A stretch of 63,683 nt of DNA, counting the filler, from Sluysia triapertura (Eukaryota), in NCBI GenBank assembly GCA_046118255.1. It is 5 parts of 5 records of this genome, joined end to end, with 100 filler letters (N's around TTAATTAATTAA, not from the genome) between each part and the next. Parts side by side here need not be neighbours in the genome. Positions count along the whole stretch, not along the records: positions 1 to 16,945 come from JBJNIA010195044.1; 4 more parts are not named here. One strand, given 5' to 3'. The notes under the pieces are model-generated. The model was not told the DNA's origin, did not search any database, and saw only the letters and a list, made by a program, of their open reading frames with translations. The position numbers and the translations under genes were made by a program. Positions 60 through 10,012 of the stretch are shown here, piece after piece (position 1 is the first letter of the stretch; each line of letters opens with the position of its first letter).

Positions 60-634
60 TTTTTGAATCAAAATCCTGCGGATATTTGATTCTTGTAATA
101 TATTTAAATTTAATTTAAAATGTTCCCCTCATTATATCGGGGCTGTAAGATTTCCTTAAGCTTATTTTACCTATATTTTATGTTTCAACTTTACAATAAT
201 AAACTTACCAAACAACTAAAAAGTAATTAGAATAATTCCACAAGATTTTCTTGCACTTGAATCGTAAAACCGTGTCCGTGCTTAATACATCTTCTTGAAA
301 AATGAATCACAAGAATAATATTAAATAAATTTGTACGAATGACTTGAATAATAAGAGTAAATGCTTTATTATATAAATAATGATTGTTGTCTGACTAATA
401 ATTGTGTTGAAAATTGAACTGATGCTAGTTCATACACTAGTCATTAGCCAATAGAAATCGGTGGAATGTTCTAGAACATTCTAGAAGCTTCTATTCTATT
501 TTTAGAAGTTTATTTTCTTTTTGGGAAATAAATGTTTTAGTCGTTTGGAAGCTTTTAAATATTTTTTAAATGATTTTTTAAATTTTGTAATGATGTTTTA
601 GATAATTTTAAAGGGTTGTTATTGCAACCTAACA
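60..634 (-). mobile_element. LTR-like repeat family B copy (starts TGTTAGGT on minus strand) carrying an HSE array
   Basis: Terminus ...ACCTAACA (627-634) recurs at 38372-38379 and, inverted and slightly degenerate (TGCTAGGT), at 49623. All three copies share the GAA/TTC array. Segment 66-90 resembles the reverse complement of ~50175-50200. The distal boundary is approximate. Confidence 0.55.
463..492. promoter_or_regulatory. Heat-shock-element-like array, six perfect alternating nGAAn units
   Basis: gGAAtgTTCtaGAAcaTTCtaGAAgcTTCt matches the HSF consensus exactly. A CCAAT box lies at 448-452. Confidence 0.65.
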
Positions 635-3510: not shown

Positions 3511-3756
3511 ATGAAAATTGAAATTTTCTTATCATTCATGTCCATGATTATAACATGTGTCTTTTCACTGACTACAGATGATTTAGAAAATTATCCAAAA
3601 TTAAATATATATAACACTGGATCGTTTAATATTGGTATGCATGCTGGTATTGTTTTGGTAATTTGTTATTCTATTTTGGGTTTTGTCTGTGGACTCGTTA
3701 ATTTAGTATACGTATTGAAAGGCAATAAAAGACGGGTACGCTCTAGAATTGAATGA
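3511..3756 (+). CDS. Small single-pass membrane protein (signal peptide, short ectodomain, TM helix, basic tail), paralog 1
   Basis: Intact 81-aa intronless ORF with hydrophobic N-terminus, TM segment AGIVLVICYSILGFVCGLVNLVYVL and tail KGNKRRVRSR. AATAAA at ~3824. Ungapped alignment to 4086..4328 gives 26/59 identities (hand count). Confidence 0.7.
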   Translation: MKIEIFLSFMSMIITCVFSLTTDDLENYPKLNIYNTGSFNIGMHAGIVLVICYSILGFVCGLVNLVYVLKGNKRRVRSRIE

Positions 3757-4085
3757 ATTTTGGTAATTAATTTTTATTTAACGTGATATATATATAATGT
3801 CTATTTATTTTATATAATTTAATAATAAATTTACTTTTTATTCTTTATTCAAATTTATTTTTATTAAAAATAAATTATTATTTTGTTAGATTTAAGTTAG
3901 AGCCGTTAGACGCTTAACAGAAATATACGATGATAATATAATTTTTTGTACTTTATGTTTTTCGTCGGTTATGTACGCATTATTATACTAAAACAATAAT
4001 AAAATAAACATTAAATTTCATATTAAAAATTATTTAACCAAAAATTTGATTTAAAATTTTTATATTTTCTCAAACCATTTTAGCA

Positions 4086-4328
4086 ATGAAATTGATTTTG
4101 TTTTATACATTCATTGGAATTGTTTTATCAATTACAAAAGATGAATTAGGTGCATATCCGCAGTACAAAAAATATGATACTGATACATTCGATATTCCAT
4201 GTCATATCGCGAAGGCACTGTTTATTTCGTTCAGTATTTTTACTTTTGTTTGGTGCGTTGCAAATTTGATTTTCAAATTAAAGGGCTATAAAAGACGCAA
4301 AAGATTGAAAGTTTTACGTGAGAATTAA
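4086..4328 (+). CDS. Small single-pass membrane protein, paralog 2
   Basis: Intact 80-aa ORF with the same architecture as 3511..3756. Shared motif T-x-D-[DE]-L-x-x-Y-P-x4-Y-[ND]-T-x-[ST]-F-[ND]-I-x-x-H and NL-x3-LKG-x-KRR-x-R. AATAAA at ~4357. Confidence 0.7.
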   Translation: MKLILFYTFIGIVLSITKDELGAYPQYKKYDTDTFDIPCHIAKALFISFSIFTFVWCVANLIFKLKGYKRRKRLKVLREN

Positions 4329-5750: not shown

Positions 5751-6561
5751 CATATACTTACCTAAATGTAATATTAAAATTAGTGTTCGTTAAATTAAAT
5801 TAATAACAATGACTCTATAACAAAATTAAACAAATTAAAATCTCAATATATTTAACTTTATTACAACGAAATTTAGAATATCAAAATTAATTATAATTCA
5901 ATAATAAATCAATATCAATTAGTCGTATTTTAAAATAAAAAAAAACAACTTATACAAATGTTAGTGGCCACATAACAAATAAATTTATAAACACAATACA
6001 TACTTAAGACCCAATTAGCCAAGATTAAAAAATTAATTAAAAATAAAAGTTTGTAAATTACTAAAAAATGAAAGCTTCAATCGCAATGTTTGACACTGAT
6101 GAGTTGAAAGAACTATCTTAAAGAAGTCTATTTATTATTGCAATACAACTCATACTTCAAAACCATCATAAGCACTTTAATATAAATAAAATTTCACTTG
6201 ATTTTAAATGTAAGAAATAAGATAATTAAAAGATATATTATACACTAAAGAAAATAAAAGAATTTATGCATTATGTATATTTTTTAATTATTATTACTTT
6301 ATTTTCCTATTTTATTATAATTATTATTTGTTAACCATTTTCGTATTATTTTTATTAATTTTATTTTTATTTATTTATTTATTTCATTTTCATTATTTAT
6401 TTTGCGTTAGTCACCAATTATCATTATCACTACTTTGTTTTTGTTGTTGCTACCACTACCGTTCCTAACAGTGGTGACAATTTGATATAGTCATACATTA
6501 GCTCCTGTCTTTTGTTGACAATCAATTTTAATTGAGAGTCTGTGTTTAAAAAGTTCATTGC

Positions 6562-6781: not shown

Positions 6782-7228
6782 ATGTTTTCTAAGCAAAGAC
6801 CACATCCAATTATTTATAATGATGCGACAGATCGGAATGGAATTAAATTAAACATGAATGAAAACGTAAATCAAGAAATATCAAATCATTTGGAAACGTC
6901 TTATGATAAAGTAATAAAATCTTCTAATCTTCAATTCATCGATTCATATTCAAGATGCAATATGTCGTTTTGCCATTCTTGGACTATGACGAATTTATTT
7001 TCCAGACCATATTCTGCTTTAGGCAAATACAAAGTTCTATTTCATATTAAATTAAATGCTAATCGCTCATTTCTTAGTATTTTGGTTTCATCTTCAAAGC
7101 TCAAAACACATTGCGACAAACAGTCATCATCAATTATGTCTCTAGATGATATTACCAATTTCAATCAGTATACTCTACGAAATCATGAATTACCATCAGA
7201 AAATGTTCATTACTTCATAAATTGTTGA
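6782..7228 (+). CDS. Hypothetical intronless protein (148 aa), no family recognised
   Basis: Longest ORF in the supplied track, higher GC than its flanks, ATG start, downstream of the CCAAT module. May be a truncated pseudogene. Confidence 0.35.
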   Translation: MFSKQRPHPIIYNDATDRNGIKLNMNENVNQEISNHLETSYDKVIKSSNLQFIDSYSRCNMSFCHSWTMTNLFSRPYSALGKYKVLFHIKLNANRSFLSILVSSSKLKTHCDKQSSSIMSLDDITNFNQYTLRNHELPSENVHYFINC

Positions 7229-7434
7229 GCCATCGCACGCTAGTAGAAGTTATTATTGTAGATTAATTTTTATATTTAGCAGAATTAAGATTACTATTAT
7301 TTTTTTTATTCATATTATCACGAGGAATTTTATTTATGTGAAAACTAGAGTTATGACAAAATTGGTGCTTAAGGCACTCGAAACGTTCTTTATTAAAGAA
7401 AACTTTTAAATTAAAATAAGATGAGAAATTTTTA

Positions 7435-8669
7435 TTATACGCAAATAAGACGAATTATATAAGACTTACATTCATTCGTCTTCACTCTTTTAAAATTATT
7501 TACAAGGTCAGGTTCGACAGCCGGCTTATGAGAACACGTTATCCGAGTAAGATTATTATAATAACGATACATCGTATAATAAATGCGGACAACAGCAGTA
7601 AAGACATCAAAAATTAAATCGAAGGTGACGTTACAAGCTTCTATGTCTACTAACTCGTCATCGGTACCAAACAAGTAATGTTCTTGTTTGATTTGATTGC
7701 TCTTTAACAAATTAATTATAAAACTTAAATAAACAGTCTCGTACACTTGATCTATTTCACAAGTTTTGTAGTCTGAACCTCCATTTAGAATAGGAACATT
7801 ATTGTTTGGCCAATGATAGTTTCAAATCTTGAGTTTGGTCTATTATCCCAGAATTATCATCCCTATTTCTGTCAAGTTTTATATTAAAATTATAGGTTAC
7901 AGAAAACAATATGTTCACAAACGTCACATTTATTTTAAAATTCTTAGCAATCTAAGAATGATATTCTTCCTTACATGGAATAAACTTATTTGCGTACAAA
8001 AAATCTACTAATTCTAGTATTTTAATTATTTCTTCCTTTAATGGCTGATTCGAATTTTCTGGAATCATCAAACATTCAGACCAGGTTTCTGGAACAGAAC
8101 CGTGCGAATTTATAAACGAACGTCGGTGTCTTGTTGATCCGAGCACAGTTCGTGTTTTAAATGAATCAACATTTGTTTCCAAAATTGATTTATTCTTATA
8201 ATAATTATTGTCTTCAATACCACGTTCAACAGTTGTGCATCATTATTTTCTAACTTCTCGTAATCAGCTGTTAAATCTCTTCCTAAATTATTATCAATTT
8301 TATTAGCTACAAGCATTTTATAGGCACCATATGCGCCATCATGGTCCAATCGAATAATCCACTGTTTAACACTTTCATAAGACCGTAGATTTGTTATGCC
8401 ATAAACTACAAAAACACCCTCTGCTTGGATATAAAAAGCTTTAGCAATTGCCATGTACTTTTCTTGTCCGGCTGTATCCAAAATCTGTAATTTAATTTTC
8501 AGTACATCAACATCAACTGTTTTTATTTTAAAATCGACTCCAATAATAGCTAAAAAGGTTGAATTAAATTGATAATCTGTATAAGAAGCAGCATACTTGT
8601 TTTACCAACACTCGAGCCTTCAATAAGTAATAGTTTGATTAAATGATCATATTGCTTAAATCCATCCAT
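7435..8669 (-). pseudogene. Intronless Rab GTPase pseudogene (Rab1/8/10-like N-terminus) with a long decayed C-terminal extension
   Basis: ATG at 8669 gives MDGFKQYDHLIKLLLIEGSSVGKTSMLL, then a 1-nt deletion at ~8584, then YTDYQFNSTFLAIIGVDFKIKTVDVDVLKIKLQILDTAGQEKY...VANKID. The G1 Gly is replaced by Glu, WDTAGQE has become LDTAGQE, and no G5 (SAK) box is found. ORF pieces 7952-8182 and 7435-7746 continue on the same strand through frameshifts. Confidence 0.8.
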
Positions 8670-8967
8670 AATAGGTTGAAAACATTTAAAATAATTAATG
8701 AAATTTAAAAATTAAATTGAATCGCTTTTGTTTCGTTAATTGACCTATATTTCTAGCTTATTATTAAAATAAAATAAGCATAAGGTACATTACAAAAATT
8801 GCATTTTGAAACAAAAACAAAAACTAATAAATTATTCTTTCAAAATCACATTGAATAGGCGCATTTATAACAATTATTTATAATCTATATAAACTTTAAT
8901 TTCTATATTTCTTTGTAACTTCTTTTTAAAAACTTTTATTTCTCTTTTTAAAATACAGGCAAAAGGA

Positions 8968-10012
8968 ATGTATCATAACGATGGCAAGACGACAATGTGC
9001 TGTGTTTTATTTTGATCTAAAAATGTTAGCAAAAAGGATTTTATTAGACATCTGATATTTTATAAGAATGAGTGTTGTGATGTTGTAAATGATATAGATG
9101 AGACTCGTTATAATGTAATCTTTTGTAATGAGGTTTGTGTCAGTGGATGTTATGATTGATGTGATATATAGGTAGTTGTAGGCTGGATCACCACAGTTAT
9201 GCATAAATTATTGTTTAAGAACAATGACTCAACTGATCATAATGTTTACAGGTTTCTCCAGTCTTTGAAGGACTTTATTCAAGAAATTAAAAATAATGTA
9301 AAACTTTTCATCAATGATCTCAATCTCATGATCATGTTAGAATTAATGTTCAGAGAAACAAATAGACTAGTGATCAACTCCAATTTAGATATTAAATGTT
9401 ATGTTACACTATGTTTTATCCCCTCAACGAATTCCGTGCTTGCAAACATGATGCTACGAAAAATAAAAGTAATAAAGCGAGTGCAATTTCGTCGTATGTC
9501 AATTTGTATGACATCAAAACTCTTGATGGTAATATCGCATCAGATCGTACAATAGAATCCGCTGTTTCAAACAATTCCGCCACTCAATCATACCATCTAT
9601 TAACTATGTTGTTTCAAATCCAAAACAAGAGATTCTAATGTAAGAACAGCAAAATATCAATTCAAATCCAACAGACTCGGTCAATACAGCAATCATGTAA
9701 ATGTTATCATTCCATTAGTGAAATTAACAATGTTGATACACGATCGAAATATCTACACGTCTCGACAAGCTCATTAACGATATTCATTCCTGCACAGATC
9801 AAAGCAAGTCGATATGTAATATGAACAATGATAATGATCATGTAATTACTCAAACCATCGCTCATACTACTGTTCTTGGACTTAAAGTAATATTATTGTT
9901 TTATTTTAGAACGCCATTTAATCCTGATAACTTTTATTTCAGGAATCTTAATCCACAGAAGATTTTGGCGGTTCAGGTTGCAAATGTACTGCGGAACCTC
10001 ACTAATGAGTAA
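8968..10012 (+). pseudogene. Decayed intronless coding region of unknown family, interrupted by a family A repeat
   Basis: Overlapping frameshifted ORFs 9199-9555, 9396-9638 and 9821-10012 on one strand with raised GC. A repeat fragment at ~9040-9195 separates them from an ATG at 8968. Confidence 0.35.

What the first reader, a model, noticed from the sequence alone, without database searches (positions are those of the whole stretch)
3511..4328. Tandem pair of intact, deeply diverged single-pass membrane microproteins
Seen: two 80-81 aa intronless ORFs 329 bp apart, aligning without gaps over 59 residues with 26 identities and many conservative changes. Each has a signal-peptide-like start, a ~25-aa ectodomain (D-x-L-x-x-YP-x4-Y-[ND]-T-x-x-F-x-I-x-x-H), one TM helix, a KGxKRRxR tail and a downstream AATAAA. 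Most neighbouring ORFs are broken, so two open frames after this much divergence point to purifying selection (inference). I recognise no family. The topology loosely recalls FXYD-type pump/channel regulators or small surface proteins, but that is analogy only.
Basis: partly seen in the sequence, partly recalled or inferred. Interest (0 to 1): 0.7.

Follow-up and report, generated by a model that had tools for sequence, protein, structure and literature searches.

The report
Flatworm-wide single-pass membrane microprotein pair
Two neighbouring 80-residue genes are real, selected members of an unnamed family of tiny single-pass membrane proteins found across flatworms, including major parasites; what the family does is not known.

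Summary
ORFs at 3511-3756 (81 aa) and 4086-4328 (80 aa), 329 nt apart on the + strand, are paralogs: 38% identity, E 7e-19.

They are not chance ORFs and not transposon ORFs:
- The 619-Mb, ~24% GC genome holds exactly eight copies. All are open, and no broken copy was found.
- The locus DNA is single-copy.
- A codon model gives omega far below 1.

A profile search of 1.84 billion proteins found 39 relatives. Every named one is an uncharacterised flatworm protein (Macrostomum, Protopolystoma, Schistosoma, Fasciola, Echinococcus, Taenia, Hymenolepis, Mesocestoides). The genome is therefore most likely a flatworm, and the family is phylum-wide.

The shared layout is:
- a signal peptide with A/G/S at -1;
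- a conserved ~24-aa ectodomain, [VI]TLEE..P.K[YF]I.YD...FN...H;
- one long membrane helix;
- a G.K..RR basic tail.

Nothing known matches. Pfam, NCBIfam, PDB sequences, fold searches and the ESM Atlas give no match, and the FXYD model PF02038 hits none of the copies. No paper mentions the family.

My best reading, an inference, is a small accessory subunit of a larger membrane protein.

The parts
3511..3756 (+). Gene 1 (W1): complete intronless CDS, 81 aa plus stop
   Evidence: ORF list. Matches the family profile at E 2.8e-22. CDS GC is 29% against 20% in the flanks.
3511..3567 (+). W1 signal peptide, residues 1-19, predicted cleavage CVFS|LTT
   Evidence: N-terminal hydrophobic peak. Across the family, the column before the conserved [VI]T motif holds A/G/S and the -3 column holds V/A/T. 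This fits the von Heijne -3/-1 rule, which I apply from my own knowledge. No SignalP was run.
3568..3642 (+). W1 short ectodomain, residues 20-44, carrying the family motif (here LTTDDLENYP...IYN...FN...MH)
   Evidence: Column conservation in alignment A2. In the AlphaFold model this part has only two 3-residue helical turns and no globular fold.
3631..3720 (+). W1 transmembrane helix: model helix at residues 41-70, hydrophobic core about residues 45-69
   Evidence: AlphaFold2 on A2 gives helix 41-70 with block pLDDT 94-98. Kyte-Doolittle mean is 2.53 over 19 residues.
3718..3753 (+). W1 basic cytosolic tail, KGNKRRVRSRIE
   Evidence: 6 K/R against 1 D/E. G, K and RR columns are conserved across the family. 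The cytosolic side follows from the positive-inside rule, which is an inference.
3757..4085 (+). 329-nt AT-rich spacer between the two genes
   Evidence: No Rfam match. The RNA fold is not unusual, z -0.96. Only low-complexity tandem repeats are present.
4086..4328 (+). Gene 2 (W2): complete intronless CDS, 80 aa plus stop
   Evidence: ORF list. Matches the family profile at E 9.1e-20. CDS GC is 29% against 18% in the flanks.
4086..4130 (+). W2 signal peptide, residues 1-15, predicted cleavage IVLS|ITK
   Evidence: by the same reasoning as for W1.
4131..4205 (+). W2 ectodomain, residues 16-40 (ITKDELGAYP...KYD...FD...CH)
   Evidence: Alignments.
4206..4280 (+). W2 transmembrane segment, about residues 41-65
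   Evidence: Kyte-Doolittle mean 2.16 over 19 residues. Aligns with the W1 helix.
4281..4325 (+). W2 basic tail, KGYKRRKRLKVLREN
   Evidence: The stretch after the hydrophobic peak (KLKGYKRRKRLKVLREN, which starts two residues before this part) holds 9 K/R against 1 D/E.

Best explanation
Shown or well supported (about 0.9): W1 and W2 are two real, intronless protein-coding genes made by an old local duplication with a 575-nt start-to-start unit. They belong to an unnamed family of 77-96-aa proteins that has eight copies in this genome. The family is conserved across Platyhelminthes, from free-living Macrostomum to flukes and tapeworms. The genome is therefore most likely a flatworm. Each product is probably a type I single-pass membrane protein. 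A 15-20-aa signal peptide is cut after a small residue. This leaves a ~60-aa mature protein that starts at the conserved [VI]T[LM][EQ]E motif. It has about 24 residues outside the membrane, one long membrane helix and a 12-17-residue K/R-rich cytosolic tail.

Inferred (about 0.4): the protein has no domain of its own. Its strongest conservation lies in the juxtamembrane stretch YD...FN...H[AG] and the outer half of the helix. I therefore think it works as a small accessory subunit that packs its helix and outer collar against a larger membrane protein, such as a pump, channel, transporter or receptor. The basic tail would fix its orientation and might touch the partner or lipid headgroups. The several paralog lineages per genome would supply tissue- or partner-specific isoforms, as the FXYD, KCNE and phospholamban-type proteins do in other animals. 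The partner is unknown.
For: Paralogy: E 7e-19.

Copies in this genome: eight, all open, and no broken copy at E <= 0.1.

Selection:
- Synonymous sites are saturated, pS 0.66 against an expected ceiling of about 0.68, while pN is 0.39.
- Codon ML gives omega about 0.03, and fixing omega at 1 costs 72 lnL units.
- CDS GC exceeds flank GC in 7 of 8 copies.

Not a repeat: the locus DNA is single-copy, with no terminal repeats.

Conservation across the phylum:
- 39 profile hits at E < 1e-3, and every named one is a flatworm protein.
- The alignment has near-invariant Y, D, F, N, H, A, Y, L, V, G, K and R columns.
- Schistosoma and Fasciola share a 39-41-nt phase-1 intron at the same codon, as real spliced genes would.

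Topology:
- Two hydrophobic peaks, an acidic loop and a basic tail.
- Conservation starts exactly after an A/G/S column.
- The model has one helix at residues 41-70 with pLDDT 94-98 and no globular ectodomain.

Subfamilies: W1, W2, C228527 and C59669 form one clade with support 97/89. The other four copies fall with other subfamilies.
Against: - There is no expression evidence here.
- No partner is known.
- Conservation along the helix shows no significant one-face periodicity: 944 of 5000 shuffles reach the observed moment at 100 degrees. The expected packing stripe is therefore not demonstrated.
- No sequence or fold link exists to any known accessory subunit.
- The omega value is unreliable in size because dS is saturated. 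The fitted tree length of 63 is unrealistic.
- The flatworm origin of the genome rests on this family alone. A Rab-like exon found no named relative.
Confidence: 0.4

Rival explanations
1. The genes and the type I topology are real, but the protein acts on its own. It could form a homo-oligomeric helix bundle, that is a small pore or membrane organiser. Alternatively it could be a short surface tag whose conserved 24-residue ectodomain is recognised by another cell or by a secreted factor.
For: The ectodomain motif is as conserved as the helix, so it may be a binding epitope. The helix carries conserved polar residues (H, Y, and N in this genome's copies), which pore-forming bundles often have. 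Other small type I proteins of flatworm surfaces exist, such as Sm13/Sh13 of the schistosome tegument (PMC1523344).
Against: A ~24-residue ectodomain without cysteines or a fold is short for a ligand. There is no periodic conserved face. The family is also present in free-living Macrostomum, so it is not a host-interface invention. No similarity to any known pore former was found.
Confidence: 0.3
2. The genes are real, but the N-terminal hydrophobic segment is not cleaved. The product would then be a two-helix hairpin with both ends in the cytosol and the conserved motif as a short outer loop.
For: AlphaFold models residues 2-16 as a confident helix, with block pLDDT 82-89. No dedicated signal-peptide predictor could be run.
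Against: The N-terminal segment is the least conserved part and varies in length from 15 to 32 residues. It is always followed by a small residue at -1 just before the conserved block. This is the pattern of a cleaved signal peptide, not of a functional helix.
Confidence: 0.1
3. The ORFs are precursors of secreted or amidated peptides. They would be cut at the basic cluster that follows a conserved glycine.
For: The size, the signal peptide and the conserved G.K..RR near the C-terminus loosely recall flatworm neuropeptide precursors. This is my own knowledge, not tested here.
Against: The segment in front of the basic cluster is a 25-30-residue strongly hydrophobic helix and would not be soluble. 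The glycine is separated from the first basic residue, G-x-K, whereas an amidation site reads G-K/R-K/R. Nothing peptide-like follows the cluster.
Confidence: 0.05
4. The ORFs are not functional genes. They would be chance open frames, decaying duplicates or remnants of a mobile element.
For: AT-rich genomes do throw up occasional 80-codon frames: 17 frames of at least 77 codons in this piece against 2.4 in shuffles. No transcript evidence was obtained.
Against: - Eight of eight copies are open at saturated synonymous divergence.
- Omega is far below 1.
- Relatives occur across a phylum at E down to 2e-17.
- The DNA is single-copy and carries no repeat structure.
Confidence: 0.02

Closest known systems
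FXYD ion-transport regulators (Pfam PF02038: phospholemman, Na,K-ATPase gamma subunit, CHIF)
   Same: Both are small single-span proteins with a short ectodomain whose conserved motif sits directly above the membrane helix, followed by a basic juxtamembrane tail. Both occur as several paralogs per genome. The family core [YF]-I-x-Y-D-x3-F-N-x-[GW] resembles F-x-Y-D-Y-x2-L-R-x-G in residue type and spacing. The FXYD side of this comparison is from memory.
   Different: The PFXYD signature with its seven invariant residues (PMC12860976) is absent. There is no invariant P-F, no GG pair and no terminal Ser, and the helix is about 9 residues longer after the YD. PF02038 gives no hit at E <= 10 to any of 35 members or to any of the eight loci in a six-frame scan. 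A link to Na,K-ATPase is untested.
Sm13/Sh13 tegument antigens of Schistosoma
   Same: They are small type I membrane proteins of flatworms with a signal peptide and one C-terminal membrane helix, and they have no described function (PMC1523344).
   Different: Sm13/Sh13 are 104 aa, with an ectodomain of about 60 residues and only 3 cytosolic residues, and were reported without homologues in other organisms. The present family has a 24-residue ectodomain and a 12-17-residue basic tail, and is phylum-wide. The sequences were not compared directly.
KCNE, phospholamban/sarcolipin/sarcolamban-type and SMIM microproteins
   Same: They are the same kind of molecule: proteins under 130 aa with one membrane helix, known or thought to act by docking onto channels or pumps.
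   Different: Phospholamban-type peptides are tail-anchored and have no signal peptide. KCNE proteins are longer and glycosylated. There is no Pfam match to any of them. The ESM Atlas gave SMIM9 only 0.80, below the level the tool calls meaningful.
Unnamed flatworm 'hypothetical proteins' (e.g. EmuJ_000365600, BOX15_Mlig019061g1, FGIG_10795/D915_010704, TsM_000066600, UniProt A0A5K4FAM4)
   Same: These are true homologues with the same length, layout and motif. Profile E-values run from 1e-8 to 1e-21.
   Different: W1 and W2 belong to a fast-evolving clade found only in this genome. In that clade P.K[YF]I is reduced to YP....Y. The trematode copies carry a 39-41-nt intron that the copies here lack.

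Membership tests
FXYD (PF02038, ATP1G1_PLM_MAT8) | Match to the family model at or above its curated cut-off of 26.9 bits | tested here: not met
   No PF02038 hit at E <= 10 for 35 family members. A six-frame scan of the whole genome with PF02038 hits none of the eight loci.
FXYD (PF02038, ATP1G1_PLM_MAT8) | 35-residue signature beginning PFXYD with seven invariant residues (PMC12860976). From memory the seven include two Gly and a Ser in or after the helix. | tested here: not met
   Column counts in A2 show that Y-D is conserved (30 and 23 of 35). The position before it is I, not an invariant F, and P lies 3 residues further upstream. The G column after the motif holds W 15 and G 9. There is no GG pair and no conserved terminal S.
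FXYD (PF02038, ATP1G1_PLM_MAT8) | Single-span membrane protein with the N-terminus outside | tested here: met
   Hydropathy, charge distribution and the signal-peptide pattern, plus a single confident helix at residues 41-70. This is prediction only.
FXYD (PF02038, ATP1G1_PLM_MAT8) | Physical association with the Na,K-ATPase alpha/beta subunits and modulation of the pump | not testable with these tools
   Needs co-purification or electrophysiology.
Unnamed flatworm microprotein family (alignment A2) | Significant match to the family profile over its whole length | tested here: met
   W1 scores E 2.8e-22 and W2 E 9.1e-20 over profile positions 1-81 and 6-80. A profile built only from this genome's copies finds flatworm proteins at E down to 2e-17. 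The A2 profile includes W1 and W2, so the result is the independent one.
Unnamed flatworm microprotein family (alignment A2) | Layout: signal peptide, [VI]T[LM][EQ]E...YD...FN...H motif, one helix, G.K..RR tail, 77-96 aa in total | tested here: met
   W1 has YN for YD and W2 has FD for FN. Both keep the H, the helix and the KG.KRR tail.
Sm13/Sh13 tegument antigen | 104 aa, ectodomain of about 60 residues, helix at residues 80-101, 3 cytosolic residues (PMC1523344) | tested here: not met
   The architecture differs: a 24-residue ectodomain and a 12-17-residue tail. The sequences were not compared because no Sm13 sequence was available from a tool.
Transposon or viral ORF | Multi-copy DNA, terminal repeats, or a match to a mobile-element protein family | tested here: not met
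   The 1.4-kb locus is single-copy in the genome. There are no flanking repeats beyond AT-rich noise and no Pfam hit.

The most novel reading that the evidence does not exclude
This family could be the flatworm counterpart of the vertebrate FXYD, KCNE or phospholamban class. It would then be a phylum-wide set of type I single-helix regulators of a P-type pump or an ion channel. The partial [YF]IxYD...FN.G motif might be either very remote FXYD homology or convergence on the same docking site. The conserved exposed ectodomain would then be a parasite-specific handle on an essential transporter in Schistosoma, Echinococcus and Taenia.
Probability: 0.15. Interest if true: 0.75.

Novelty: new variant of a known kind. 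Interest (0 to 1): 0.5.

Why it matters
Microproteins of this size are often missed or mis-named by annotation. UniProt's automatic names for members of this family include 'Epithelial membrane protein 1', 'Protein S-acyltransferase' and 'Cytochrome d ubiquinol oxidase subunit II'.

This work defines a coherent family that is conserved from free-living flatworms to the flukes and tapeworms that infect people and livestock. Among the named relatives found, none lies outside the phylum, and no paper mentions the family.

A conserved, flatworm-restricted membrane protein with an exposed motif is worth a functional test, by RNAi in planarians or schistosomes and by partner identification. If it does regulate a pump or channel, it would fill a gap, because to my knowledge invertebrates have no recognised FXYD-type regulators. 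If its role is mundane, the result still adds eight genes to this genome's annotation and a family definition that can be reused.

Tried and rejected
**Searches that found nothing**
- The word-indexed search with the six-copy alignment found nothing at E <= 0.01. The exhaustive profile search was needed.
- Pfam, NCBIfam and PDB sequence searches gave only scattered sub-threshold membrane-helix noise. No Pfam family was hit by more than 2 of 35 members.
- The PDB profile hit to a phosphodiesterase (5vyd/7d7p, E 0.007) covers the enzyme's Y..PFHN..HA stretch. I take it for coincidence, because in our family that stretch runs into a membrane helix.
- The ESM Atlas gave best scores of 0.77 and 0.83, below its own threshold.
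- Foldseek against PDB found no match. VIA-align gave only single-helix matches at Z <= 4.4, including PsbX, NaV beta1, glycophorin B and syndecan-2.
- Paper searches on six gene identifiers and six UniProt accessions of family members found nothing.

**Tests that were blocked or uninformative**
- Conserved-face test on the helix: not significant.
- Nothing stood out by eye upstream of the eight start codons; a common splice acceptor or promoter motif was not tested.
- Nucleotide similarity of the W1 and W2 flanks cannot be separated from the AT-rich background.
- The inter-gene spacer has no unusual RNA structure.
- Organism identification by the Rab-like exon failed, with no word-sharing candidate. 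Protopolystoma xenopodis, which I recalled as having an assembly of similar size, is unlikely. Its family member P0016 was in alignment A2, but none of the eight hits in this genome corresponds to it.
- A direct profile-profile comparison with FXYD was not possible, because no tool supplied FXYD sequences that I could use.

**Things to declare**
One used the window as the target of my family HMM and the other made ORF-length statistics.
- Contig C169306 carries a canonical FXYD exon. It may be vertebrate, possibly human, contamination. After one composition check and one translation I did not compare or search it further.

Full report
**1. The observation.** The piece is very AT-rich, with GC 21-32% in 1-kb windows. 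The ORF list shows 3511-3756 (+), 81 aa, and 4086-4328 (+), 80 aa, separated by 329 nt. BLASTP of the two products gives 38% identity, 61% positives and E 7e-19, with one 4-residue gap inside the N-terminal hydrophobic segment. Both proteins have an N-terminal hydrophobic peak, an acidic 23-25-residue middle part, a second strongly hydrophobic stretch and a K/R-rich end. The downstream AATAAA is not evidence, because the hexamer occurs 77 times on this strand of the piece.

**2. Chance, decay or mobile element?** A six-frame search of the window's own genome (619 Mb, 263,945 contigs) found further copies on six other contigs. The search used first W1, then a six-copy profile, then a 35-sequence profile. 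In all there are eight copies of 77-85 aa, each with its own ATG and stop, none with an internal stop, and no broken copy at E <= 0.1.
- At this base composition a 77-codon open frame has a probability of about 1.3e-3.
- Pairwise synonymous differences are at the ceiling. pS is 0.55-0.82, and about 0.68 is expected at equilibrium for this composition. Non-synonymous differences are 0.39-0.57.
- A GY+F3X4 codon model gives omega near 0.03. With omega fixed at 1, lnL falls from -1982.1 to -2054.5 for the eight copies and from -1047.4 to -1083.3 for the four closest. Kappa was also fixed in the null.
- With dS saturated the size of omega is unreliable, but its direction is clear.
- CDS GC exceeds flank GC in seven of eight copies.
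- The 1.4-kb locus is single-copy as DNA and has no flanking repeat structure, no Rfam match and no third, decayed copy in the window.

The ORFs are therefore genes under purifying selection.

**3. The family.** No Pfam or NCBIfam model matches, and the word-indexed protein search was blank. The exhaustive HMMER search of 1.84 billion representatives used a profile of six of this genome's copies. It returned 39 proteins at E < 1e-3, five of them below 1e-10, and nearly all 64-153 aa long.

Every hit that carries a name is an uncharacterised flatworm protein. The named species are:
- Macrostomum lignano
- Rodentolepis nana
- Mesocestoides corti
- Fasciola hepatica and F. gigantica
- seven Schistosoma species
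- Hydatigera and Taenia
- Echinococcus multilocularis and E. granulosus
- Hymenolepis diminuta
- Protopolystoma xenopodis

One hit, on a 308-nt contig labelled Neisseria meningitidis, is cestode-like and surely a contaminant. I infer that the window comes from a flatworm. This rests on this family alone, since a Rab-like exon gave no named relative.

**4. Anatomy across the family (alignment A2).**
- The N-terminal 15-32 residues are hydrophobic and unconserved.
- One column then holds A, G or S in 28 of 35 sequences, with V/A/T two positions earlier.
- Conservation begins directly after it: [VI]-T-[LM]-[EQ]-E-[AG]-x2-[DN]-P-x-K-[YF]-I-x-Y-D-x2-P-F-N-x-[WG]-x-H-A-[GA]-I-A-L-x-I-[TSC]-Y-[SGA]-I-L.
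- The rest of the helix follows, and then K-x2-G-x-K-x2-R-R.

This is the pattern of a cleaved signal peptide followed by a mature type I protein of about 60 residues. AlphaFold2 on this alignment (mean pLDDT 85) gives one long helix at residues 41-70, with block pLDDT 94-98, and only two 3-residue helical turns in the ectodomain. Conservation along the helix does not show a significant single-face periodicity.

**5. History of the pair.** In a maximum-likelihood tree W1, W2, C228527 and C59669 form one clade with support 97/89. No sequence from elsewhere falls inside it. The other four copies group with different subfamilies that include sequences from other organisms. The pair is thus an old tandem duplication inside a lineage-specific, fast-evolving subfamily. 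No tandem partner lies within 10 kb of the Schistosoma, Echinococcus, Macrostomum or Fasciola genes. The Schistosoma and Fasciola genes share a 39-41-nt phase-1 intron right after YD[TI]. The Macrostomum gene and all eight copies here are intronless.

**6. Comparison with known families.**
- The family core resembles the FXYD signature in residue type and spacing. The FXYD side of this comparison is from memory.
- The defining PFXYD signature (PMC12860976) is not met.
- PF02038 hits none of 35 members at E <= 10 and none of the eight loci in a six-frame scan of the genome.
- That scan did find one canonical FXYD exon, on a 520-nt contig with 37% GC. I take this contig for vertebrate contamination, possibly human, and left it alone after one composition check and one translation.
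- Sm13/Sh13 of the schistosome tegument is another small type I flatworm protein, but it has a ~60-residue ectodomain and a 3-residue tail (PMC1523344).
- Foldseek and VIA-align found only generic single helices, and the ESM Atlas found nothing above its noise level.
- No paper mentions any of twelve identifiers of family members.

**7. Mechanism.** What is shown: these are real genes under selection, they belong to a phylum-wide family, and they have a single helix with a conserved collar and a basic tail. What is inferred: a 60-residue protein without a domain, conserved most strongly where the chain enters the membrane and present as several old paralog lineages, is most simply a docking subunit of a larger membrane protein. 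I give this about 0.4. The rivals are autonomous action as an oligomer or surface tag (0.3), an uncleaved hairpin topology (0.1), a peptide precursor (0.05) and a non-gene (0.02).

**8. Limits.**
- Expression could not be tested.
Two local scripts did read the whole window file, for an HMM target scan and for ORF statistics.
- All three word-indexed searches and the single exhaustive search were used, so the family's absence outside flatworms rests on one profile iteration.

Noticed in passing
G000 contig C169306 (locus L019), 170-250 (+): A canonical FXYD exon (PF02038, 44.3 bits, over the cut-off) lies on a 520-nt contig with 34-39% GC, against about 24% for this genome. It is probably vertebrate host or handling contamination and possibly human-like. 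I left it alone after one composition check and one translation.
   Followed up: partly
window 8203-8481 (-), inside the GC-richer block at about 7000-10000: This is an exon of a divergent Rab-like small GTPase. It matches Pfam Ras at E 6e-16, and its best PDB matches are Rab1 and Rab8 at E 3e-12. The word-indexed search found no candidate sharing words with it, so it is unusually diverged.
   Followed up: partly
L024 10110-10150 (Schistosoma) and L034 10119-10157 (Fasciola): The trematode members of the family share a very short (39-41 nt) phase-1 intron directly after the YD[TI] codons. The Macrostomum gene and this genome's copies lack it.
   Followed up: yes
Proteins P0047, P0045, P0039, P0008, P0059 and P0032 (database names): Automatic names given to family members contradict one another and look wrong. 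They include 'Epithelial membrane protein 1', 'Protein S-acyltransferase', 'Cytochrome d ubiquinol oxidase subunit II' and 'G_PROTEIN_RECEP_F1_2 domain-containing'. One cestode-like member sits on a 308-nt contig filed under Neisseria meningitidis.
   Followed up: no
Proteins P0015 (182 aa) and P0002 (locus L017): P0015 is a family member with a ~100-residue cytosolic extension rich in G, Y, D and P. The 153-aa call for P0002 reads through a TGA codon. The real product starts at an internal Met and is 82 aa with the usual layout.
   Followed up: partly
PDB 5vyd_A and 7d7p_A against family profile positions 31-61: The family's Y..PFN.W.HA stretch matches a Y..PFHNWRHA stretch of these two phosphodiesterase chains at E 0.007. 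I judge it a coincidence, but it is the only PDB sequence hit.
   Followed up: no
window 10721-10849: An (AAT)n microsatellite of about 43 units lies here. Other AT-rich low-complexity arrays lie at 6270-6402 and 3803-3869.
   Followed up: no
locus L006 114-1367 (contig C14533, next to one family copy): A 331-aa ORF and a cysteine-rich C..C...C..C ORF that looks like a zinc finger lie within 400 nt of the family copy on contig C14533. They were not characterised.
   Followed up: no
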